A stretch of DNA of 35,262 nucleotides from Octopus bimaculoides (Eukaryota). Within the stretch, counting starts at the first letter, position 1; each line of letters starts with the position of its first letter. Below, piece after piece: positions 440 through 32,803 of this stretch. Made by a program: the position numbers and the translations under genes. The stretch is from contig NC_068998.1 of assembly GCF_001194135.2 (NCBI RefSeq), positions 26,770,272 through 26,805,533 on the forward strand. The letters are read 5' to 3'. Below the pieces are notes generated by a model. The model made no database searches. It saw nothing but the letters and a program-made list of their open reading frames with translations, and had not been told where the DNA came from.

Positions 440-652
440 AAGGAAACTTCTCTAATCTTGGCACAAGGCCCGAATTTTTGGAAGGAGACGGCCAGTTGAT
501 TAGATCGACCCCCATACGCAACTGATACTTAATTCACAGGTACTTAATTTATCGACCCCGAAAGCGGAATTTGACCTCAGAACATAAAGACAGACGAAAT
601 ACCGCTAAGCATTTCGCCCAGTGTGCTAACGTTTCTGCTAGCTCGCCGCCTT
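440..652 (-). mobile_element. tRNA-derived SINE, family A (head GGCGGCGAGCTAGCAGAA), with 8-bp TSD
   Basis: Reverse complement begins ggcggcgagctagcagaaacgttagcacactgggcgaaatgcttagcgg and is homologous to the + strand copies at 4677 and 10041; B-box-like gaggtcaaattcc; direct repeat GACGTATA at 432-439 and 653-660; lacks about 24 nt (gaggtcgactttgcctttcatc segment) present in the other copies. Confidence 0.9.
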
Positions 653-1607: not shown

Positions 1608-2534
1608 NNNNNNNNNNNNNNNNNNNNNNNNNNNNNNNNNNNNNNNNNNNNNNNNNNNNNNNNNNNNNNNNNNNNNNNNNNNNNNNNNNNNNNNNNNNNN
1701 NNNNNNNNNNNNNNNNNNNNNNNNNNNNNNNNNNNNNNNNNNNNNNNNNNNNNNNNNNNNNNNNNNNNNNNNNNNNNNNNNNNNNNNNNNNNNNNNNNNN
1801 NNNNNNNNNNNNNNNNNNNNNNNNNNNNNNNNNNNNNNNNNNNNNNNNNNNNNNNNNNNNNNNNNNNNNNNNNNNNNNNNNNNNNNNNNNNNNNNNNNNN
1901 NNNNNNNNNNNNNNNNNNNNNNNNNNNNNNNNNNNNNNNNNNNNNNNNNNNNNNNNNNNNNNNNNNNNNNNNNNNNNNNNNNNNNNNNNNNNNNNNNNNN
2001 NNNNNNNNNNNNNNNNNNNNNNNNNNNNNNNNNNNNNNNNNNNNNNNNNNNNNNNNNNNNNNNNNNNNNNNNNNNNNNNNNNNNNNNNNNNNNNNNNNNN
2101 NNNNNNNNNNNNNNNNNNNNNNNNNNNNNNNNNNNNNNNNNNNNNNNNNNNNNNNNNNNNNNNNNNNNNNNNNNNNNNNNNNNNNNNNNNNNNNNNNNNN
2201 NNNNNNNNNNNNNNNNNNNNNNNNNNNNNNNNNNNNNNNNNNNNNNNNNNNNNNNNNNNNNNNNNNNNNNNNNNNNNNNNNNNNNNNNNNNNNNNNNNNN
2301 NNNNNNNNNNNNNNNNNNNNNNNNNNNNNNNNNNNNNNNNNNNNNNNNNNNNNNNNNNNNNNNNNNNNNNNNNNNNNNNNNNNNNNNNNNNNNNNNNNNN
2401 NNNNNNNNNNNNNNNNNNNNNNNNNNNNNNNNNNNNNNNNNNNNNNNNNNNNNNNNNNNNNNNNNNNNNNNNNNNNNNNNNNNNNNNNNNNNNNNNNNNN
2501 NNNNNNNNNNNNNNNNNNNNNNNNNNNNNNNNNN
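1608..2534. other. assembly gap (N run)
   Basis: N run preceded by (TA)n. Confidence 1.
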
Positions 2535-2845: not shown

Positions 2846-3037
2846 GCCAACTGCCATATCACGTTTGAATGCACCGGTTCTCGTCCGATCACCGAAGTTA
2901 AGCAACGTTAAGCCAGGTTAGTACTTAGATGGGTGACCCCTTGGGAAATCTAGGTGGTGTAAGCATTTCAAACTTCCAAGGCGATGCTCCAGCATGGTTG
3001 CAGTCAAATGACTGAAACAAGTAGAAAATAAAAGAAT
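2846..3037 (+). mobile_element. 5S rRNA-derived retroposon (candidate SINE3 or 5S/SINE-tail chimera)
   Basis: 2846-2966 is a full-length 5S-like sequence (gccaactgccatatcacgtttgaatgcaccggttctcgtccgatcaccgaagttaagcaacg...gtacttagatgggtgacc...gtgtaagcat) with box A (2896-2909) and box C (2925-2938) regions; followed by only TTT and then the tail aaggcgatgctccagcatggttgcagtcaaatgactgaaacaagta (2978-3023), 38/46 identical to the tail of the SINE at 7490-7952, then an A-rich end. Confidence 0.85.
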
Positions 3038-3049
3038 ATATGTGTATAT

Positions 3050-3450
3050 ATTAGGTATTGGACCCTGCGTTGCTCGTGTTTTCTGTGTTGAAGTTAAGCC
3101 CACCTCTGACCTTGTATCGAAATCTTCTATCGTCAACTATTACCCATTAAGATGTTTTATCCGTTTGTTGAAATTTTACACGTGACAAAATGCAAAAGCT
3201 GCAGGGAAAATAACATTGTTATGGGAATTACCATTCAAACACCCGATTGAGCTCACAAAAATCGATGCCAACTGAGCATTATCGAGTTTTTGAATAAAAA
3301 TTTCGACCTTATTTGAACTTCAGGGCATGTGATTCACCTATGTGCCAAAAAATCATTAAAATTGGTTGGACAGTGTGGGAGGAGTTAGAGTAACCCCAAA
3401 CACAGATACACACACACACACAGAGGCAACATTACACATTTATGTATATA
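3050..3450 (+). mobile_element. possible non-autonomous Helitron/DINE-Lep1-like element
   Basis: 5' motif gaccctgcgttgctcgtg resembles the GACCCGGCGTTGCCCGG motif; 3' part tgtgccaaaaaatcattaaaattggttggacagtgtgggaggagttag followed by (CA)n and catttatgtatata resembles the typical subterminal block of these elements. Recognised by resemblance only. Confidence 0.45.
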
Positions 3451-3508: not shown

Positions 3509-3660
3509 NNNNNNNNNNNNNNNNNNNNNNNNNNNNNNNNNNNNNNNNNNNNNNNNNNNNNNNNNNNNNNNNNNNNNNNNNNNNNNNNNNNNNNNNNNNN
3601 NNNNNNNNNNNNNNNNNNNNNNNNNNNNNNNNNNNNNNNNNNNNNNNNNNNNNNNNNNNN
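3509..3660. other. assembly gap (N run)
   Basis: N run preceded by (TA)n. Confidence 1.
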
Positions 3661-4479: not shown

Positions 4480-4676
<197 letters not shown>

Positions 4677-4894
4677 GGGCGGCGACCTGGCAGAATCATT
4701 AGCACGCTGGACGAAATGCTTAGTGGTATTTTGCCTGTCGCTACGCTCTGAGTTCAAATTCCGTCGAGGTCGACTTTGCCTTTCATCCTTTCGTGGTCGA
4801 TACATTAAGTAACAGTGAAACACTGGGTTCTATGTAATCGACTAGTCCCCTCACCCAAAATTTGAGGCCTTGTGTCTCCAATAGAAAAGATTAT
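4677..4894 (+). mobile_element. tRNA-derived SINE, family A
   Basis: ggcggcgacctggcagaatcattagcacg...gagttcaaattccgtcgaggtcgactttgcctttcatcc...ggccttgtg...agaaaagattat; A-box-like tggcagaatcattag and B box gagttcaaattcc; homologous to 440-652 and 10041-10252. Confidence 0.9.
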
Positions 4895-6468
4895 AAGTAT
4901 ACAACAGCTGGAAAAGAAAAAGTTCTAACATCGAGCTACATCAAGTAACATTAAATGCCAGGAACCCTCCTCAGTATCCTAGCTGTCTCTAATAACACTG
5001 TTTTCTGGAGCTGTACTAAACTGTGTTTTATGCCTATTTTTTTCTATCCATCTGTTCAAATCTTTAGGGATAGTTCCCAATGCATCTATGACTACTGGGA
5101 TACATTTTACCCCCACTTTCCATAGTCTCTGTAATTCAATGCCTAGGTACTTTGTATTTTTCCTATACTTCTCATATTAATTTTTTCATCATTTGGGAGT
5201 GTAAAGTCAATTATCTGGCATTTTCTATGCTCTTTATCTACTACTACTAAATCAGGCCTTCTAGCTTCTATTACTATGTCAGTTTGAATGTTAAAGTCAC
5301 ACAACATCTTGTATATCTTACTTTCTAATACTTTACTAGATTCATGTTCATACCATTTATCAGTATGTTCAAATCCTAGCTTTCTACATAACTCCCAGTG
5401 GATTACTCTTCCTAGGTTGTCATGTCTTTTCTACATGCTACATTCACTTACTGTATGAATAACGCTTTTCTCTTTTGATTTGTATAACCTGCATTAGGAA
5501 TCTACTTGGATCTTATCTATCTTGGCTTTTATCCAATTAGTCCTTAATGTTTGATCTTGTGCTGCAACTAACAAACACTCTGTCTCCCCTTTCAGCTTTT
5601 CTTTCTGCAACCACAACCATGTTTCACTACAACTATTTACTCCGTCTTTGGGAATCTACCATGCAACGCCTTCTCCTGTCAGTCAAATAATTTCTGTTCT
5701 TTTTCTGGTTTTTAATTTCGTTTGGGTTTTTGGTTTCCTTATGTCTTGCTGTGACTCTAGCAGCTTTTAATAAACTTTCTTCACTATTACCTACGTAGAA
5801 GTCAATATATACTGTAGCTAACTCCACGCAGTCTTCTAATGATATTAACCCTCTTCTTCCCTCCTTTCTAAGTAAGTATAATCTTGCTACTCTTGCCTTT
5901 GGGTGGAGTCTTCTATTCGTATTGTCTTCCTTCCTAGTTCTTCTGTCTGGCTTTGCTAGTTCAGTTTTTGTCCAATCTACAAAATCTACTGAGTATCTAA
6001 GTAATGATACTGCCCAAGTATTTATAGCCATCAGTAGATTCGGGCCATTTAACTTTGACTTCATTAGCTTCCTCACTTACGGTCTGTATTAAGGAATCTG
6101 TCTCTTTTCATTCTTACTAAAAAGTCTCAGATTATCCATGTAGAGCAAATGGTTAATTTTCCCATTATTATTTCTGAACTGACACCCTGCCTTTGCCTTC
6201 TTTAATACTAAATTGAGGGTGATCAAACACAAGACAAATATTAAAGGGGACAACGAGCCCCACTGGAAAATTCCTCTTTTGATATTAAAATTCCCTAAGA
6301 GTGTGTCACCTGAGTAGAGATCTACTTTCCATTTCTTCTTGCTACAGCTAATTAATTCTCTTATGTTGTCTGCTATATTGAATATACTCATACATTCACT
6401 TATCCATGAGTGTGGGATCATGTCATAGGCTTTCCTATAATCTATCCATGCTATTGTTAGGGTTTTAT
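4895..6468 (-). mobile_element. 5'-truncated, degenerate R4/Dong-clade non-LTR retrotransposon (RT, thumb, CCHC knuckle remnant, RLE endonuclease, short 3' UTR)
   Basis: AWIDYRKAYDMIPHSW, RGIFQWGSLSP, HLLYMDNL (YMDD decayed), LHPKARVARLYLLRKEGRRGL; hand translation of 4951-5630 gives ETECLLVAAQDQTLRTNW, CRL, KRHD, RRPDLVVVD, IIDF and LQKTVLLETARILRRV with stop at 4951-4953; several stops and frameshifts. Confidence 0.9.
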
Positions 6469-6513
6469 ACAATTCCATGGTCATTCATGACCGAAGGGGA
6501 TCTTTACCCTTTA
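6469..6513 (+). mobile_element. isolated 3' tail fragment of the SINE family at 25518-25856
   Basis: ccatggtcattcatgaccgaaggggatcttta (6475-6506) matches the reverse complement of 25522-25553 at 31/32 positions. Confidence 0.8.
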
Positions 6514-7041: not shown

Positions 7042-7489
7042 TGATAGTGACGAGCATTTGCACAGTTTTCTTTAGCCAAATAGTACTCACAAGGCACTGT
7101 TCAAGTTAGGCTATGATGGGAGGCGCTTGACGGATCGATGCGTATTGAGATCGAATCGGGGAACGTTTGCAAAGCAATATATTTTTATAAGCAGACAGTG
7201 ATGTTGTGGCCATACACAACCATCTCTACACACAAGTTGGTTTCATTTTCCAGTGTCTTTTAGTTTTAACATTGGCCTCAAAAATATGAGAGGGGTAATC
7301 GATTTAATACATCTTAGTGTTTGACCGTAACTCATCATCTCAACAAGAGAGACTGTACACAGTTGTTAGAAATAACAGCTAGATTTCCTTCAAATTGTAT
7401 TTTACTTTATACAAAAGACAGTGAGACAGGGGGTGAGAGAAATTGAGAGGCAGATAGAAAGAGACACAGAGAAAGTTTTTCGATATGTT

Positions 7490-7774
7490 TTATCCATCTT
7501 TTACTTGTTTCAATCATTAGACTACGGCCATGATGGGGCACCGCCTTCAAGAATTGCAGTGGAATGAATCGACTCCGGTACTTATTTTATTTTCATTATT
7601 TTTTGTGAAGTGTCGTATTTATTTTATCGGTGTCTTTTGCCGAACTGCAAAGTTACGGGATGTAAACACACCAACACCGGTTGTCAAGCGGTTGTGGAGA
7701 ACAAACACAGACACAGAGACACACATACAAACACACATACACATAGATAGATAGATAGATAGATAGATAAATAA

Positions 7775-7805
<31 letters not shown>

Positions 7806-7952
7806 TGCGACGGGCTTCTTTAAGGTTTTGTCTACGAAATCCACTGATAGGGATAGTAGATGATATTTGCCCAAGTTGCCACGTAATAGGACTGAGCCCA
7901 GAACCATGTGGTTGGGAAGCAAACTTCTTACCACGCAGCCATGCCAGCACCT
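7490..7952 (-). mobile_element. tRNA-derived CORE-like SINE with internal (CA)/(GATA)n expansion
   Basis: Reverse complement: head aggtgctggcatggctgcgtggtaagaagtttgcttcccaaccacatggttctgggctcagtcc, CORE-like cttgggcaaatatc, internal microsatellite 7720-7805, tail aaggcggtgccccatcatggccgtagtctaatgattgaaacaagtaaaag. Confidence 0.8.
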
Positions 7953-8540
7953 ATAACGTTAATCTAAAAAAAGAACGAGATGGCCACAGCTGGAACGCTT
8001 ACATTGCCGATGACCTTAAGTTAAACAACAATTGACGCTTAAGTTACATCCAAAGTTTTAATGATTCAAGAAGCATCTTCGCTGTTTTCTAGACGAGACA
8101 TTTTATATGTTGTAAATACTCTTTCCAATATAGAATAACACACTGCCTTCAAAAACATTCAATATTTCTTTTTTATTTCTAGATGCCTTAGCTCTATGTC
8201 TAACGATGTATGTACTGCTACTTAAACACACACACATATTATATATTACATATATTATATATTACATATATCCATATATGTATGTGTGTTTGCGTTTATT
8301 TATGTATTTATATATTTGCCTCTGTGTGTGTGTGTCTGTATGCATACAAGTATAACTACATGAATGCACATATAAGTATACGTATTTATGTGTTTCAGTA
8401 ATCATTTCACTCTGTCCATCCCTTTCTGTCTACCCATCCACCTCTCTAATTCTCTGTAAGGATATACTGCAACCCTTCTCGTTCTTCTTCTCGTTTATTG
8501 AATTTACCACCTCATGTTCTTCCATCCATCTCCTCTTCAG

Positions 8541-10040: not shown

Positions 10041-10252
10041 GGGTGGCGAGCTAGCAGGATCGTTAACAGGCCGGATAAAATGCTTTGTGGCCACTTCTTC
10101 CAGCTCTACGTTATTCCACCGAGGTCGACTTTGCTTTTCATCCTTTCGGGCTCAATAAAATAAATACCAGTCGAGCAATGGGATCGATGAAATCGACAAA
10201 CCTCCTCTCTTCAAAAGTTCAGGTCTTGTGTCTATAGTAGAAAGAATTACGT
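10041..10252 (+). mobile_element. tRNA-derived SINE, family A, with 13-bp TSD
   Basis: gggtggcgagctagcaggatcgttaac...cgaggtcgacttttgcttttcatcc-like body...ggtcttgtgtctatagtagaaagaatta; GTACAATATGCTC at 10028-10040 and 10253-10265; the B-box segment is deleted. Confidence 0.9.
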
Positions 10253-14589: not shown

Positions 14590-14785
14590 CCGGAATACAT
14601 AAACATGCATGCATGCATACATACATAGATACACACATACATACATACATACATACATACATACATACATACATACACACATATATACATGACTACATAG
14701 ACGCATGCTTCTAGTTACATGTGTATGTGTGTATGTGTGTGCATGTGTGTGTGTATGCATACACGCAGACATTCACACACATGTA
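14590..14785. repeat. (CATA)n and (GT)n/(GTAT)n compound microsatellite
   Basis: Direct reading. Confidence 0.9.
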
Positions 14786-15189
14786 TATATATTTCAAAAT
14801 GTCGTTTGCAATGAATCTCAATTTCTAAGTGGCCTTTTGATTCTAATACCACAAATAATACTCCCGAACTATTAAAGATTGACTTCAGGTTTGAAATATT
14901 AGTGAAATATCTATTTTTTTCTGTGTAGAAATTTATGAGCAATATTGTCATTGAATACTGATTTTCAATCTCTGGCTCACTGTTTTTACTATCCGCGAAA
15001 GTAACAAAGGAGTTTTTGTAAAACGGTGCAAAACAATTATCGGGAGGGTCTCCATTCAATAAGTATCGATTTTATAGTCGATCGCATCCTTCGCCGATAT
15101 ACATCACCGAACCGTATACATACAAATATGTAGGTATGTATGTAGGCATACATACATGTGTTTATTTGTGTGTGTGTGTGTGTGTGTAT

Positions 15190-19769: not shown

Positions 19770-21026
19770 CAGGGGTGGGACAACATAATGGAAACACCTA
19801 GCATCATAGCATCATAATTTTGAAATATCTATAAAACCGTCAAAAGCTTGTTTTTTTTTCATTTATTATTAGTGTATTATTATTACCTTTGCTAAAATTT
19901 TTGTTTCTTTTCAGATATCATGAGAAAAAGGTAATTAAAATTTATTAAACTGACTGATCAATTGGACTTTCAAAGAGGTCAAATTGTTGGTGCTTGTATA
20001 GCAGACGCTAGCGTAACGAAAACAGCCGAAATGTTTGGTGTATGAAGAAGTGCTGTCTCGAAAGTAATGACAGCCTTTGAGAAAGAGGGAAAAACCGCCT
20101 CGTCGAAACAAAACTCTGGAAGAAAGCAAAAACTTTCTGATAGGGACCGTCCAACTCTTACGCGAATTGTTAGAAAAGATCACAAAAGTACAACTCCTAA
20201 AATTACTGTAGAGCTTAATGACCACCTCGAGAACCCAGTTTCCACAAAAACTGTTCGCCGTGAGCTGCAGAAAGCTGGATTTCACAGGAGGGCTGCAATC
20301 AGAAAACCACTACTTTCAAAAACAATTGTTGCAAGGCGTTTAGAGTGGAGTAAAAACCTACAGAATTGGTCCCTAGAGCAGTGGAAGAATGTTATTTTCT
20401 CGGACGAGTAATCCCTTACCTTATTTCCGACCACTGGCCGAGTATACGTGTGGAGACAGCCAAAAGAAGCATTTGACCCAGACTGCCTTCTTCCAACTGT
20501 TAAACATGGAGAATGATCTGTGATGATCTGGGGGGCTATCCTGGAAATCAACCGGCCTAATGGTTTCCCTTCATGGCAGAATTAATAGTCAAGACTATTT
20601 AAGCATTTTATCTGATCAAATTCATACTATGGTTGCGGAACTGTTTCCGGAGGGAAACGTAATCTTTCAGGATGACAATGCACCAATTCACACAGCTAAA
20701 GTTGATACTGAATGGCATGAGGAACATTCTAGTGAAGTTGAACATCTTATCTGGCCACCACAGTCCCCAGATCTCAATATTATTGAATATTTATGGTGCA
20801 TTTTAGAAAAACAAGTAAGGAGTTGATATCCTCCACTATCATCACTACAAGAACTGGAGACTGTTTTAGCTGAAGAATGGACAAAAATTCAAAATTTGTA
20901 CGAGTCCATACCTCGTAGAATTACTGCCAAATTACTGTAATTACTGCCAAAGGCGGTCCTACCCAATAGTAAAATGAATTTGTTTGAAATTTTAAGGTGT
21001 TTCCATTATTTTGTCCAACCCCTATG
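19770..21026 (+). mobile_element. near full-length Tc1-like DNA transposon, DD36E (Incomer-type), about 1.26 kb, TA TSD
   Basis: Left TIR caggggtgggacaacataatggaaacacct (19770-19799) versus reverse complement of right end cataggggttggacaaaataatggaaacacct (20995-21026; two mismatches plus a 2-nt insertion); TA at 19768-19769 and 21027-21028; internal transposase remnant. Confidence 0.93.
19950..20969 (+). pseudogene. Tc1-family transposase pseudogene (DD36E)
   Basis: DFQRGQIVGA, SGRKQKLSDRD, VRREL, NVIFSDE, KHGE*SVMIWGA, FQDDNAPIH, WPPQSPDLNIIE, SIPRRI, AKGGPT; 36 residues between D of DNAP and E of NIIE; start codon decayed (CTG), at least four premature stops and one frameshift near 20541. 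Confidence 0.92.
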
Positions 21027-22879: not shown

Positions 22880-22910
22880 GCGTGTGTATGAATGTATGGA
22901 TATATGTATG

Positions 22911-22941
<31 letters not shown>

Positions 22942-23070
22942 ACGTATATATATATATGTATGTATGTATGTATGCATGTATATATGTATGTATGCATATA
23001 TGTATGCAGGTATGTATGTATGCATGTTTGTATGTATGTATATATGTATATATATATGTATGTATGCATG

Positions 23071-23104
<34 letters not shown>

Positions 23105-23170
23105 TGTATGTTTGTATGTATATATATATATATATATGTATGTATGTACGTATGTATGTATAGACAGATA
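22880..23170. repeat. long imperfect (TATG)n/(TA)n microsatellite
   Basis: Direct reading; source of the MYVC/HTYI ORFs. Confidence 0.95.
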
Positions 23171-23544
23171 GATAAACTCACAGAGGTAGAGACATACATG
23201 AACTCAAATTTAGCCACATATATATATCTTCACAGATAAATTCATACACATTCACTAAAAGCTTAAATATATTGAAGTATAAAGAAACATATACACATAA
23301 TGCTTGCCTTTGAGGGACACATTCACACACACACAGATGTATGCACACGCATATATGTATACAGGGACATCGCTGTGTTGCTTCATTTTCATTTACAAAC
23401 AATAATTGCTAACACATATACATATACACATTCTTACATATACGTATGTATAATTTCCACACATAATTACACACACATGCACACACGCGCACGCAGACAC
23501 ATTCAAACATACACAAACACACATATATTTATATATATAGGGAG

Positions 23545-24805: not shown

Positions 24806-25435
24806 NNNNNNNNNNNNNNNNNNNNNNNNNNNNNNNNNNNNNNNNNNNNNNNNNNNNNNNNNNNNNNNNNNNNNNNNNNNNNNNNNNNNNNNNNNNNNNN
24901 NNNNNNNNNNNNNNNNNNNNNNNNNNNNNNNNNNNNNNNNNNNNNNNNNNNNNNNNNNNNNNNNNNNNNNNNNNNNNNNNNNNNNNNNNNNNNNNNNNNN
25001 NNNNNNNNNNNNNNNNNNNNNNNNNNNNNNNNNNNNNNNNNNNNNNNNNNNNNNNNNNNNNNNNNNNNNNNNNNNNNNNNNNNNNNNNNNNNNNNNNNNN
25101 NNNNNNNNNNNNNNNNNNNNNNNNNNNNNNNNNNNNNNNNNNNNNNNNNNNNNNNNNNNNNNNNNNNNNNNNNNNNNNNNNNNNNNNNNNNNNNNNNNNN
25201 NNNNNNNNNNNNNNNNNNNNNNNNNNNNNNNNNNNNNNNNNNNNNNNNNNNNNNNNNNNNNNNNNNNNNNNNNNNNNNNNNNNNNNNNNNNNNNNNNNNN
25301 NNNNNNNNNNNNNNNNNNNNNNNNNNNNNNNNNNNNNNNNNNNNNNNNNNNNNNNNNNNNNNNNNNNNNNNNNNNNNNNNNNNNNNNNNNNNNNNNNNNN
25401 NNNNNNNNNNNNNNNNNNNNNNNNNNNNNNNNNNN
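24806..25435. other. assembly gap (N run)
   Basis: N run followed by (GT)n. Confidence 1.
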
Positions 25436-25888: not shown

Positions 25889-27111
<1,223 letters not shown>

Positions 27112-28038: not shown

Positions 28039-28896
28039 NNNNNNNNNNNNNNNNNNNNNNNNNNNNNNNNNNNNNNNNNNNNNNNNNNNNNNNNNNNNNN
28101 NNNNNNNNNNNNNNNNNNNNNNNNNNNNNNNNNNNNNNNNNNNNNNNNNNNNNNNNNNNNNNNNNNNNNNNNNNNNNNNNNNNNNNNNNNNNNNNNNNNN
28201 NNNNNNNNNNNNNNNNNNNNNNNNNNNNNNNNNNNNNNNNNNNNNNNNNNNNNNNNNNNNNNNNNNNNNNNNNNNNNNNNNNNNNNNNNNNNNNNNNNNN
28301 NNNNNNNNNNNNNNNNNNNNNNNNNNNNNNNNNNNNNNNNNNNNNNNNNNNNNNNNNNNNNNNNNNNNNNNNNNNNNNNNNNNNNNNNNNNNNNNNNNNN
28401 NNNNNNNNNNNNNNNNNNNNNNNNNNNNNNNNNNNNNNNNNNNNNNNNNNNNNNNNNNNNNNNNNNNNNNNNNNNNNNNNNNNNNNNNNNNNNNNNNNNN
28501 NNNNNNNNNNNNNNNNNNNNNNNNNNNNNNNNNNNNNNNNNNNNNNNNNNNNNNNNNNNNNNNNNNNNNNNNNNNNNNNNNNNNNNNNNNNNNNNNNNNN
28601 NNNNNNNNNNNNNNNNNNNNNNNNNNNNNNNNNNNNNNNNNNNNNNNNNNNNNNNNNNNNNNNNNNNNNNNNNNNNNNNNNNNNNNNNNNNNNNNNNNNN
28701 NNNNNNNNNNNNNNNNNNNNNNNNNNNNNNNNNNNNNNNNNNNNNNNNNNNNNNNNNNNNNNNNNNNNNNNNNNNNNNNNNNNNNNNNNNNNNNNNNNNN
28801 NNNNNNNNNNNNNNNNNNNNNNNNNNNNNNNNNNNNNNNNNNNNNNNNNNNNNNNNNNNNNNNNNNNNNNNNNNNNNNNNNNNNNNNNNNNNNNNN
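28039..28896. other. assembly gap (N run)
   Basis: N run flanked by (GT)n and (TA)/(TATG)n. Confidence 1.
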
Positions 28897-30428: not shown

Positions 30429-30483
30429 NNNNNNNNNNNNNNNNNNNNNNNNNNNNNNNNNNNNNNNNNNNNNNNNNNNNNNN

Positions 30484-30700: not shown

Positions 30701-31052
30701 TGGGTGAATATGGGTGTAATATAATTATAATAGTTATATATATATATAAATTAGATGCCTTGATTTGATGAACTAAGGAAATAAGTAATGTGTTGTATAT
30801 ACCCACATTTCCCTTCTTACATACAAAATTTATGACTAGAAATAACACTTGTGAAGCCTACGGAAATTAGCAGGTGACATTTTCTATGTTACCATGTTAT
30901 TTTTAATAAAATGTCAGCAGTTATAATGCAAAAACTACGTGCATAATGAAATAATGAAAGAATCATTTTAAATGCATTCTAATAAATCAGAATCTCGAGG
31001 ACTATGTAACTTGTTGAGTTTCTCATAGTGTTCGTTTTTTGTAATGTTCATG

Positions 31053-31083
<31 letters not shown>

Positions 31084-31245
31084 GAATGTACATATATGTC
31101 TCTGTGCATAGACGTATATCTCTTCTTTGTTGTTTTAGTTCCTCCGACGTTGTCGACGATGACCAAGGACATCATATGGGAGAAGAAGACGGGGCGCGGT
31201 GCATACCGTACATATATATTAAATACAATAACGTCATAACATATA

Positions 31246-31286
<41 letters not shown>

Positions 31287-31296
31287 NNNNNNNNNN
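31287..31296. other. assembly gap (N run) within (TA)n
   Basis: 10 N. Confidence 1.
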
Positions 31297-31322
31297 TACA
31301 TCATACATACACACACACACAC

Positions 31323-31361
<39 letters not shown>

Positions 31362-31776
31362 ACAAACTTAGCGGCACATGAAGGTATTTACATCTGAATA
31401 TGCTTGTGTCATTCTCATATATCTTACGTATTTGTGACATACTCCTCAACTTCATTGATTTATTATATTGATATGCATTATTATGCATTCCTTATCGAAT
31501 CAAACAGCGCACGTATATACGTATGAAGATGAAAGTACTATCGCTGCCTCACACTCTCCCTCTGTTACTCTCTCATTTACTCTCTCTCCTTCTGTTACAC
31601 TCTCACTAACTCTCTCCCTCTCATTTACTCTTTCTCGCTCTCTCGCATACGCCAACGCAGAATTCAATATTTCATACATTCTTCCACTAACACACGCACA
31701 CACCCATGTACGCACAAATACATACATCCATACATATATTTACTTGTGTATGTATATATATATGTATATGTATATA

Positions 31777-32215
31777 NNNNNNNNNNNNNNNNNNNNNNNN
31801 NNNNNNNNNNNNNNNNNNNNNNNNNNNNNNNNNNNNNNNNNNNNNNNNNNNNNNNNNNNNNNNNNNNNNNNNNNNNNNNNNNNNNNNNNNNNNNNNNNNN
31901 NNNNNNNNNNNNNNNNNNNNNNNNNNNNNNNNNNNNNNNNNNNNNNNNNNNNNNNNNNNNNNNNNNNNNNNNNNNNNNNNNNNNNNNNNNNNNNNNNNNN
32001 NNNNNNNNNNNNNNNNNNNNNNNNNNNNNNNNNNNNNNNNNNNNNNNNNNNNNNNNNNNNNNNNNNNNNNNNNNNNNNNNNNNNNNNNNNNNNNNNNNNN
32101 NNNNNNNNNNNNNNNNNNNNNNNNNNNNNNNNNNNNNNNNNNNNNNNNNNNNNNNNNNNNNNNNNNNNNNNNNNNNNNNNNNNNNNNNNNNNNNNNNNNN
32201 NNNNNNNNNNNNNNN
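31777..32215. other. assembly gap (N run)
   Basis: N run flanked by (TA)n. Confidence 1.
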
Positions 32216-32249
32216 TAAATATATATATATATATATATAAATATATGTA

Positions 32250-32324
<75 letters not shown>

Positions 32325-32803
32325 CCCTTTATATACACACATACAAACATCACATTATCCACCCACTTGCATACTCACTCAAAAAGAAACACTGAAATGA
32401 ATATGCAAGCATGCAGTAATTAATACACACGCACACACATACTCTCACACACGCACCGATACACGCACTCACACACACACACACACACACACACAGCAGA
32501 TGTGACATTTATTTAGCTACTGTTGCATAATTCATCATTGACCTTCTTGAGAAGCAAACATTTTATAGTTTAATAGTGAAATCAAAATTGTTGCTACTTT
32601 TTTTTTCGTATGACTATTTACCAGATCTTAGCTAAGCTATTTGACAACACGTTGCAATAATGAAAAAATAAAAGAAAAAACATCATTTATCTTTTACAAC
32701 TTTGGAATGGAAGAGATGTCACCTAAACTTGGTCTGTTGATCTCAAGAGGACATAACACGTTATTTATGGTAGTTGATGTAGTAGTTAACTTAGTAGGCA
32801 GTA

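What the first reader, a model, noticed from the sequence alone, without database searches (positions are those of the whole stretch)
2846..3037. Full-length 5S rRNA head fused to a SINE 3' tail: candidate 5S-derived SINE (SINE3)
Seen: a 121-nt 5S-like sequence is followed, after only TTT (no T4+ Pol III terminator), by a tail 38/46 identical to the 3' tail of the tRNA/CORE SINE at 7490-7952. That tail keeps a perfect CAGTC-AAAT-GACTG hairpin and ends in an A-rich stretch. Helix I is broken (5' GCCAAC cannot fully pair with 3' GTAAGC) and box C reads TAGATGGG instead of TGGATGGG, so this is not a working 5S gene. Established: SINE3 elements use the type 1 internal Pol III promoter of 5S RNA and borrow a LINE-recognised tail, and are far rarer than tRNA SINEs. 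Inference: either a family of 5S-headed SINEs sharing a mobilising LINE with the CORE SINE, or a one-off template-switch chimera like U6/L1 fusions. No TSD is visible. I do not know whether such a family is already catalogued for cephalopods.
Basis: partly seen in the sequence, partly recalled or inferred. Interest (0 to 1): 0.78.

Follow-up and report, generated by a model that had tools for sequence, protein, structure and literature searches.

The report
5S rRNA fused to SINE tail
A dead retrocopy in an octopus-like genome joins a complete 5S ribosomal RNA sequence to the last ~70 bases of a local SINE; it is probably one copy of a 5S-headed SINE, a known and already machine-annotated kind of element, but I could not measure its copy number.

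Summary
Rfam finds one full-length 5S rRNA match at 2846-2965 (85.3 bits, E 5e-17). It has a broken helix I and a changed box C. It is followed by TTT only.

From base 2964 the sequence is homologous to the 3' end of the SINE copy at 7483-7561 on the minus strand (81% over 52 nt, E 6e-9). That stretch includes the CAGTC-AAAT-GACTG hairpin and an A-rich end. There is no T4 run inside the element and no credible target-site duplication.

The structure is what reverse-transcriptase template switching from a SINE or LINE tail RNA onto 5S rRNA would produce.

I could not test whether the fusion then multiplied as a SINE family. No tool available here holds DNA of this organism, and every collection scan was empty even for the tail alone.

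The literature supports a family only indirectly:
- Marino et al. 2022, Table S2, lists SINE/5S (1,095 copies) and SINE/5S-Core-RTE (778 copies) in Octopus bimaculoides, and about 996 SINE/5S copies in O. vulgaris.
- The giant squid genome paper reports about 24,000 loci derived from 5S rRNA.
- HaSE3 of Helicoverpa is a described 5S SINE with the same kind of build.

Verdict: a real feature and a new member of a known kind. Family membership is about 50% likely, a one-off chimera about 35%. Interest is modest.

The parts
2846..2965 (+). Complete 5S rRNA-derived head, decayed. Four of the nine helix I pairs are non-standard.
   Evidence: Rfam RF00001, 85.3 bits, E 4.9e-17, model positions 1-120 of 120. 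It is the only 5S match in the window.
2895..2909 (+). Box A of the type 1 Pol III internal promoter (5S positions 50-64), AAGTTAAGCAACGTT. Appears intact.
   Evidence: Position read-out. These bases match the Rfam consensus in the alignment. The box numbering follows the Xenopus 5S convention (my own knowledge).
2912..2917 (+). Intermediate element (5S positions 67-72), GCCAGG.
   Evidence: The numbering follows the Xenopus convention (my own knowledge).
2925..2942 (+). Box C (5S positions 80-97), TTAGATGGGTGACCCCTT. It differs from the consensus at several bases, including the G-to-A in TAGATGGG.
2966..2968 (+). TTT at the junction. It corresponds to the U-run at the 3' end of a 5S transcript and is too short to terminate Pol III.
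   Evidence: Sequence. No run of four or more T lies inside the element.
2966..3037 (+). SINE-type tail, homologous to the 3' end of the SINE copy at 7483-7561 (minus strand).
   Evidence: blastn 80.8% over 52 nt, E 6e-9. The gapped alignment covers 2964-3041 against 7561-7483, 60 of 81 columns.
3001..3014 (+). Hairpin with a 5-bp stem and a 4-nt loop, CAGTC AAAT GACTG. It is a candidate recognition element for the partner LINE's reverse transcriptase.
   Evidence: Present in the minimum-energy fold. The other copy reads TAGTC TAAT GATTG, which can still pair through two G-U wobbles (read by eye). Function is inferred.
3015..3037 (+). A-rich 3' end (AAACAAGTAGAAAATAAAAGAAT).
   Evidence: Sequence. 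It aligns with AAACAAGTAAAAGATGGATAA of the other SINE copy.
3079..3082 (+). First TTTT downstream, where a Pol III transcript starting in this copy would be expected to end.
   Evidence: The role is inferred.
7483..7955 (-). The only other carrier of the same tail in the window: a roughly 470-nt SINE copy interrupted by a (TCTA)n microsatellite.
   Evidence: No tRNA is detected in its head by ARAGORN or Rfam.

Best explanation
The locus is a dead copy of a 5S-headed SINE (SINE3-type, simple form: head plus LINE-type tail).

Origin (inferred). During target-primed reverse transcription, the reverse transcriptase of the LINE that mobilises the local CORE-type SINE copied about 70 nt of that tail. 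It then switched template to the 3' end of a 5S rRNA and copied it to its 5' end. The product was 5S + UUU + tail.

Why it could multiply (inferred). A 5S sequence carries its Pol III promoter internally (box A, intermediate element, box C), and the fusion has no T4 terminator. A copy landing in a permissive site could therefore be transcribed through the tail. The tail, with its hairpin and A-rich end, would be recognised in trans by the same LINE. That would make the fusion a founder that multiplies.

This copy (shown). It has since decayed: helix I is broken, box C is mutated, and the tail is about 20% diverged from the one other copy in the window. It is most likely inactive.

Shown here: the anatomy and the tail homology. 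Inferred: template switching, Pol III transcription, LINE dependence, and above all the existence of many copies with this same junction.
For: The head is a full-length 5S. The tail homology begins exactly at the 5S 3' end, after the U-run. There is no internal T4, and the first TTTT lies 45 nt downstream. The locus is solitary and not in a 5S array.

Published repeat censuses list 5S-class SINEs in octopuses: 1,095 SINE/5S and 778 SINE/5S-Core-RTE copies in O. bimaculoides, and about 996 SINE/5S in O. vulgaris (PMC8967140 Table S2; arithmetic). They also list SINE/5S-Deu-L2 in the giant squid, which has about 24,000 loci derived from 5S rRNA (PMC6962438).

If the window was drawn without regard to this feature, meeting such a fusion in 32 kb is roughly 100 to 1,000 times more likely with thousands of copies in the genome than with a handful (inference).

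A described analogue exists. HaSE3 of Helicoverpa has a 5S head on the body and tail of the tRNA SINE HaSE1, with an RTE partner (PMC3272025).

The window is octopod-like. Its Tc1 transposase remnant is 82% identical to part of an O. bimaculoides gene model.
Against: Only one copy was seen, and the recurrence of the junction was not tested. No target-site duplication is visible.

The published 5S-Core-RTE class implies a CORE body between head and tail, and this element has none. SINE/5S labels from RepeatMasker can also be ordinary 5S pseudogenes that hit a shared 5S module; SINEBase gives this caveat.

The window's species is not established. The window holds only one CORE-type SINE copy, while O. 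bimaculoides averages about one per 1.8 kb. The census may therefore not apply to this genome.

Type 1 promoters depend on upstream context, so retroposed 5S copies are usually silent (argument cited in PMC3272025).
Confidence: 0.5

Rival explanations
1. A one-off or very low-copy chimeric retropseudogene. The same template switch from a SINE or LINE tail RNA to 5S rRNA happened, but the product never multiplied. This would resemble the U6-L1, 5S-L1 and 5S-Alu chimeric retrogenes of mammals.
For: The structure is exactly what this mechanism produces: a complete small RNA with its U-run joined to a 3' fragment of a retroelement. Only one copy was seen. The preference of reverse transcriptases for switching to small RNAs in chimeric retrogenes is noted in PMC4758252. 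Retroposed 5S promoters are usually silent (PMC3272025).
Against: A handful of such events in a genome of about 2 Gb would rarely land in a given 35-kb window (this argument is weak if windows were pre-selected). 5S-class SINE families are reported in octopus repeat censuses. Chimeric retrogenes normally carry clear target-site duplications, and none is seen here, although the flanking microsatellite may have erased one.
Confidence: 0.35
2. Two independent events. A 5S gene remnant or 5S retropseudogene was later hit, exactly at its 3' end, by the insertion of a SINE copy truncated at its 5' end to the last ~70 nt.
For: Copies truncated at the 5' end are common for SINEs mobilised by LINEs (for example truncated HaSE1, PMC3272025). 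A T-rich 5S terminator could attract an endonuclease that prefers T/A-rich sites (speculation).
Against: The truncation point would have to coincide to the base with the end of the 5S U-run. No remnant of a longer T-run or of 5S flanking sequence is present. No target-site duplication surrounds the tail alone.
Confidence: 0.08
3. An assembly artefact. The short-read assembler wrongly joined a 5S repeat to a high-copy SINE tail.
For: The window is a gapped scaffold with seven N runs making up 8.7% of it. The element sits in a contig piece of only 974 nt, between gaps ending at 2534 and starting at 3509. Both parts are repeats.
Against: The join is at a biologically meaningful point, the exact 5S 3' end with its U-run. 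Both parts show similar decay. The two repeats share no long k-mer that would cause a false join.
Confidence: 0.04
4. A working, dispersed variant 5S rRNA gene that happens to lie next to a SINE fragment.
For: The 5S match is full-length and box A is intact.
Against: Four of the nine helix I pairs are broken and box C is altered. There is no T4 terminator after the gene. The locus is solitary.
Confidence: 0.02

Closest known systems
HaSE3 (Helicoverpa armigera and related moths), a 5S rRNA-derived SINE that shares its 3' region with the tRNA-derived SINE HaSE1; partner LINE HaRTE1 (PMC3272025)
   Same: A 5S head with type 1 promoter boxes is joined to the 3' part of a co-resident tRNA-type SINE. 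The proposed origin is template switching from the SINE RNA to 5S rRNA. Its abundance is much lower than that of the tRNA SINE. Some copies lack target-site duplications.
   Different: HaSE3 keeps both the body and the tail of HaSE1, whereas this element keeps only about 70 nt of tail. HaSE3 is documented in many copies and several species, and its LINE partner has been identified. None of that was shown here.
SINE3 / AmnSINE1 / OS-SINE1 (5S-Deu-L2 class; Kapitonov and Jurka 2003; Nishihara et al. 2006, cited)
   Same: A 5S-derived head supplies a type 1 internal Pol III promoter, and a LINE-related 3' tail supplies recognition by the partner LINE.
   Different: Those families carry a Deu central domain and an L2-type tail (my own knowledge). 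This element has no central domain, and its tail is that of an octopod SINE.
SINE/5S and SINE/5S-Core-RTE repeat classes annotated by RepeatModeler/RepeatMasker in Octopus bimaculoides and O. vulgaris (Marino et al. 2022, PMC8967140 Table S2)
   Same: The same animal group and the same head type. The 5S-Core-RTE label suggests a 5S-headed counterpart of the dominant octopus tRNA-Core SINE.
   Different: These are automatic class labels with no published consensus that I could read, so identity with this element is untested. The element lacks a CORE domain. SINE/5S labels can include ordinary 5S pseudogenes (caveat).
Chimeric retrogenes of mammals (U6, 5S rRNA, 7SL or U3 fused to L1, Alu or mRNA 3' parts; Buzdin et al. 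2003, cited in PMC4758252)
   Same: A full-length small RNA at the 5' end is joined directly to a 3' fragment of a retroelement. Formation is by reverse-transcriptase template switching.
   Different: Those are independent single events with variable junctions, poly(A) ends and clear target-site duplications (my own knowledge). Here there is no target-site duplication, and the tail is a specific LINE-type tail rather than poly(A).

Membership tests
SINE (SINEBase definition, PMC3531059) | Short (<1 kb), interspersed, non-tandem genomic repeat | tested here: inconclusive
   The element is 192 nt and solitary; there is no second 5S in 35 kb. Whether it is repeated elsewhere in the genome could not be tested.
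SINE (SINEBase definition) | [quoted passage not shown] | not testable with these tools
   No collection here holds this organism's DNA. Only indirect published counts exist: 1,095 SINE/5S and 778 SINE/5S-Core-RTE copies in O. bimaculoides.
SINE (SINEBase definition) | At least 60% identity to tRNA, 5S rRNA or 7SL RNA over at least 60 nt | tested here: met
   Full-length Rfam 5S_rRNA match over 120 nt, 85.3 bits.
SINE (SINEBase definition) | Distinguished from an RNA pseudogene by extra (body or tail) sequence, or by diagnostic substitutions shared among copies | tested here: met
   The first criterion is met. About 70 nt of extra sequence, homologous to another SINE's 3' end, follows the 5S. 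Shared diagnostic substitutions could not be tested with a single copy.
5S-derived SINE (SINE3 type) | Type 1 internal Pol III promoter (box A, intermediate element, box C) retained in the head | tested here: inconclusive
   Box A is intact and the intermediate element is close to consensus. Box C carries several changes, including G-to-A in TGGATGGG. This fits a decayed copy of an active master but shows nothing about the master.
5S-derived SINE (SINE3 type) | No Pol III terminator between head and tail, so that the tail is transcribed | tested here: met
   Only TTT follows the 5S, there is no T4 in 2846-3037, and the first TTTT is at 3079-3082.
5S-derived SINE (SINE3 type) | 3' tail shared with a partner LINE | not tested
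   The tail is shared with another SINE copy in the window. No LINE 3' end carrying it is in the window: the LINE remnant at 5146-6484 (minus strand) has a different 3' end.
5S-derived SINE (SINE3 type) | Flanking target-site duplication from retroposition | tested here: not met
   The best direct repeat is a 10-mer with one mismatch, with about 0.1 probability by chance, and it is wrongly placed. The 5' flank is a GC/GT microsatellite that could have erased a duplication.
SINE/5S-Core-RTE class (Dfam/RepeatMasker scheme) | CORE central domain between the 5S head and the RTE-type end | tested here: not met
   The 5S end joins the terminal ~70 nt directly. No room is left for a central domain.
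Functional 5S rRNA gene | Intact helix I and a T4+ terminator | tested here: not met
   Four of the nine helix I pairs are non-standard and only TTT follows the 5S.

The most novel reading that the evidence does not exclude
This is one copy of a so far undescribed, octopod-specific 'simple' 5S SINE family: a 5S head joined directly to the LINE-recognition tail of the dominant octopus CORE-type SINE, with no central domain. It would be the first characterised 5S-derived SINE in molluscs. [quoted passage not shown] It would also be an independent repeat of the head swap seen in moth HaSE3.
Probability: 0.45. Interest if true: 0.4.

Novelty: new member of a known kind. Interest (0 to 1): 0.3.

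Why it matters
If this is a family, it adds molluscs to the short list of animal groups with 5S-headed SINEs. It would also give a clean natural example of promoter-module swapping, with a tRNA head replaced by a 5S head on one and the same LINE-recognised tail. That bears on how new SINEs are born by template switching. It would also help identify the LINE behind the very large SINE expansion in octopuses.

If it is a one-off, it is an ordinary chimeric retropseudogene. Either way this copy is dead, and nothing suggests it has a function for the host.

Tried and rejected

2. Pattern scans with a 5S box C to tail pattern found nothing in metagenome contigs or genome contigs. Scans with the tail 20-mer alone also found nothing there or in viral contigs. 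These collections hold no DNA of this organism, so the zeros say nothing about copy number.

3. A protein search with the six-frame translation of the junction gave no hit at E<=10.

4. A full HMMER scan of 1.84 billion representative proteins with the 42-residue junction peptide gave four hits. The three whose sequences show a match are antisense translations of tandem 5S rDNA arrays of other organisms, and the fourth has no aligned stretch. None carries the junction.

5. I tried to sample more of the genome through transposon proteins. The window's reverse transcriptase remnant has only relatives at 57% identity or less, from non-octopus contigs. The Tc1 remnant hits an O. bimaculoides UniRef model at 82%, but that protein has no genome position on record.

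6. The search for a target-site duplication found nothing convincing.

7. Folding of the tail and of the whole element was not better than shuffles.

8. Searches for a tRNA in the heads of the two other SINE types, with ARAGORN and with permissive Rfam scans, found nothing. Their tRNA origin therefore rests on motifs read by eye only.

9. Literature: no paper combines 5S-Deu-L2, 5S-Core-RTE or 5S-RTE with cephalopod terms in its main text. A search for the tail sequence as text found nothing. Albertin et al. 2015 and Walker and Doolittle 1983 are not held. I therefore had no octopus 5S reference sequence with which to date the head.

Full report
WHAT IS THERE

The window is a gapped scaffold with seven N runs (8.7% of the bases), about 37% G+C, and many microsatellites.

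Rfam finds exactly one match above a family's gathering score. It is 5S_rRNA at 2846-2965 on the plus strand, covering the full model (1-120 of 120), at 85.3 bits and E 4.9e-17. A permissive scan at E<=1 gives no second 5S; all its other matches are far below their families' gathering scores and most are microRNA families lying in the window's simple repeats. The locus is therefore a solitary 5S-like sequence and not part of a 5S rDNA array.

The copy is damaged. cmscan marks 4 of the 9 pairs of helix I as non-standard. Box A (AAGTTAAGCAACGTT) is intact.

The 5S is followed by TTT and then C. There is no run of four T anywhere in 2846-3037, and the first TTTT is at 3079-3082.

THE TAIL

blastn of the element against the window finds one significant partner: 2978-3029 against 7547-7496 on the minus strand, 80.8% over 52 nt, E 6e-9. 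A gapped local alignment extends this to 2964-3041 against 7561-7483, with 60 of 81 columns identical. The homology therefore starts at the very end of the 5S sequence.

The 22-mer around the hairpin occurs only at these two places in the window, and shuffles expect none. The partner is the 3' end of a SINE copy of about 470 nt (7483-7955, minus strand) that is interrupted by a (TCTA)n microsatellite.

The hairpin CAGTC-AAAT-GACTG is perfect in the 5S element. In the other copy (TAGTC-TAAT-GATTG) it can still pair through two G-U wobbles. It appears in the predicted fold, but the fold as a whole is not better than shuffles (z = -1.15). With two sequences, no covariation claim can be made.

No credible target-site duplication flanks the element. 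The 5' flank is a GT/GC microsatellite that may have overwritten one.

WHAT ORGANISM

The window carries a nearly intact Tc1-type transposase remnant (Pfam HTH_Tnp_Tc3_2 and DDE_3). Part of it is 82% identical to an Octopus bimaculoides gene model in UniRef (A0A0L8GWG0). From memory, which is a lead and not a test, the SINE sequences here resemble the very abundant octopus SINEs.

The window holds only one copy of the CORE-type SINE and three copies of a second SINE type. O. bimaculoides averages about one tRNA-Core copy per 1.8 kb. The source may therefore be another octopod, or this may be a SINE-poor region.

HOW IT MOST LIKELY AROSE

A complete small RNA, including the U-run of its transcript end, is joined directly to the terminal piece of a retroelement. 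This is the signature of template switching by a LINE reverse transcriptase. Reverse transcription starts on the tail RNA at the target nick, and after about 70 nt the enzyme jumps to the 3' end of a 5S rRNA and copies it to the end.

This mechanism is the accepted origin of mammalian chimeric retrogenes (cited in PMC4758252). It was also proposed for the moth 5S SINE HaSE3, which carries the body and tail of the tRNA SINE HaSE1 (PMC3272025).

I put about 0.85 on this step, summed over the family and one-off readings. The alternatives are less likely:
- A truncated SINE inserted by chance exactly at the end of a 5S pseudogene. This needs a coincidence to the base.
- An assembly misjoin. The two repeats share no long k-mer that would cause one.
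- A working 5S gene. The broken helix I and the missing terminator contradict it.

FAMILY OR ONE-OFF?

This is the decisive question, and I could not answer it directly. Every route to more DNA of this organism failed:
- The metagenome, prokaryote-genome and viral collections lack even the SINE tail.
- Protein-based routes to more DNA of this genome failed.

The indirect evidence favours a family.

(a) Marino et al. 2022 (PMC8967140, Table S2) list repeat classes as percentages of annotated elements. For O. bimaculoides the percentages convert to whole numbers on the paper's total of 3,637,615 elements: 1,095 SINE/5S and 778 SINE/5S-Core-RTE copies. For O. vulgaris, SINE/5S comes to about 996 copies on a total I derived from the paper's Table S3. 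A. dux has SINE/5S-Deu-L2 at 1.18% and SINE/5S at 0.19%.

(b) The giant squid genome paper reports about 24,000 loci derived from 5S rRNA, 'many likely SINEs' (PMC6962438).

(c) With about 1,900 copies, the expected number per 32 kb is about 0.03. With a handful of chimeras it would be 100 to 1,000 times lower. If windows are drawn blindly, that ratio favours the multi-copy reading.

Against a family:
- The 5S-Core-RTE label implies a CORE domain, and this element has none.
- SINE/5S labels from RepeatMasker may include ordinary 5S pseudogenes (the SINEBase caveat).
- The census species may not be the source species.
- No target-site duplication is visible.
- Retroposed type 1 promoters are usually silent.

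I therefore give 0.5 to 'copy of a 5S-headed SINE family', 0.35 to 'one-off or low-copy chimera', 0.08 to two independent events, 0.04 to an assembly artefact, and 0.02 to a functional 5S variant.

HOW A FAMILY WOULD WORK (INFERRED)

TFIIIA and TFIIIC/TFIIIB would assemble on box A, the intermediate element and box C inside the head. Pol III would start at 5S position 1 and read through the TTT into the tail, because there is no T4. It would stop at the first T-run in the flank. The tail, with its hairpin and A-rich or short-repeat end, would be bound by the reverse transcriptase of the LINE that also mobilises the CORE-type SINE, and the RNA would be copied into a new site.

The partner LINE is unknown. 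RTE-BovB is the most abundant LINE class in octopuses. The only LINE remnant in the window (5146-6484, minus strand) has a different 3' end.

COMPARISON WITH KNOWN THINGS

The element works like SINE3-type elements. In build it is closest to HaSE3, with a 5S head on the 3' part of a co-resident tRNA-type SINE.

Against the SINEBase criteria:
- Length and head identity are met.
- Extra non-5S sequence is present.
- The requirement of at least 100 copies is untestable here.
- The target-site duplication criterion is not met.
- The element cannot be filed under 5S-Core-RTE or 5S-Deu-L2, because it has no central domain.

[quoted passage not shown] A characterised mollusc family would therefore be new in the descriptive literature. 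However, automatic annotation has already flagged the class in cephalopods.

VERDICT

It is a known kind of element. This particular copy is dead, and its family status is unresolved but testable with a single genome BLAST. Interest is modest (0.3).

Noticed in passing
window 4681-4912 (+), 10045-10249 (+), 552-647 (-): A second SINE-like repeat occurs in three copies that are 72-81% identical to each other. By eye its head has tRNA-like box A and box B motifs, but ARAGORN and Rfam do not call a tRNA. The first copy directly follows a microsatellite of about 150 nt, (ATT)n, at 4530-4680.
   Followed up: partly
window 5146-6484 (-): A LINE reverse-transcriptase remnant (Pfam RVT_1) with in-frame stops and a frameshift. 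Its best relatives in the protein collection are only 57% identical and come from non-octopus contigs. Its 3' end does not carry the SINE tail.
   Followed up: partly
window 19900-20900 (+): A nearly complete Tc1-type transposase remnant with about three stops and one frameshift (Pfam HTH_Tnp_Tc3_2 and DDE_3). Part of it is 82% identical to an Octopus bimaculoides UniRef gene model annotated as a PDZ-domain protein. That model has evidently absorbed a transposon piece.
   Followed up: partly
window 26000-26800 (+): A second DDE-transposase-like remnant. By eye it looks mariner-like, with the motif VWQQDSTPGHT. It has no Pfam hit at E<=0.01.
   Followed up: partly
window-wide, e.g. 6-157, 14592-14793, 22908-23177, 31044-31387, 32218-32457: Dozens of Rfam matches to mir-297, mir-466, mir-3149, mir-1277 and sno_ZL1, all below their gathering scores, fall in the window's simple repeats (TG/TA-rich by eye). 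I take them for low-complexity artefacts and not microRNA genes.
   Followed up: no
window 3090-3099: The 10-mer GAAGTTAAGC, identical to part of 5S box A (2894-2903), recurs about 55 nt downstream of the element. No wider similarity surrounds it, so it is probably chance.
   Followed up: partly
proteins P0127, P0128, P0130 (public protein collection, not the window): Predicted 'proteins' that are antisense read-throughs of tandem 5S rDNA arrays. One is a 2,609-residue entry that matched the query peptide in 21 stretches; its repeating units are near-identical by eye. P0128 implies a 5S repeat unit of only about 177 bp. These are gene-calling artefacts in the database.
   Followed up: no
window 1608-2534, 3509-3660, 24806-25435, 28039-28896, 30429-30483, 31287-31296, 31777-32215: Seven assembly gaps (N runs). 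Most of the long ORFs in the mechanical ORF list run across these gaps or across microsatellites and are not genes.
   Followed up: yes
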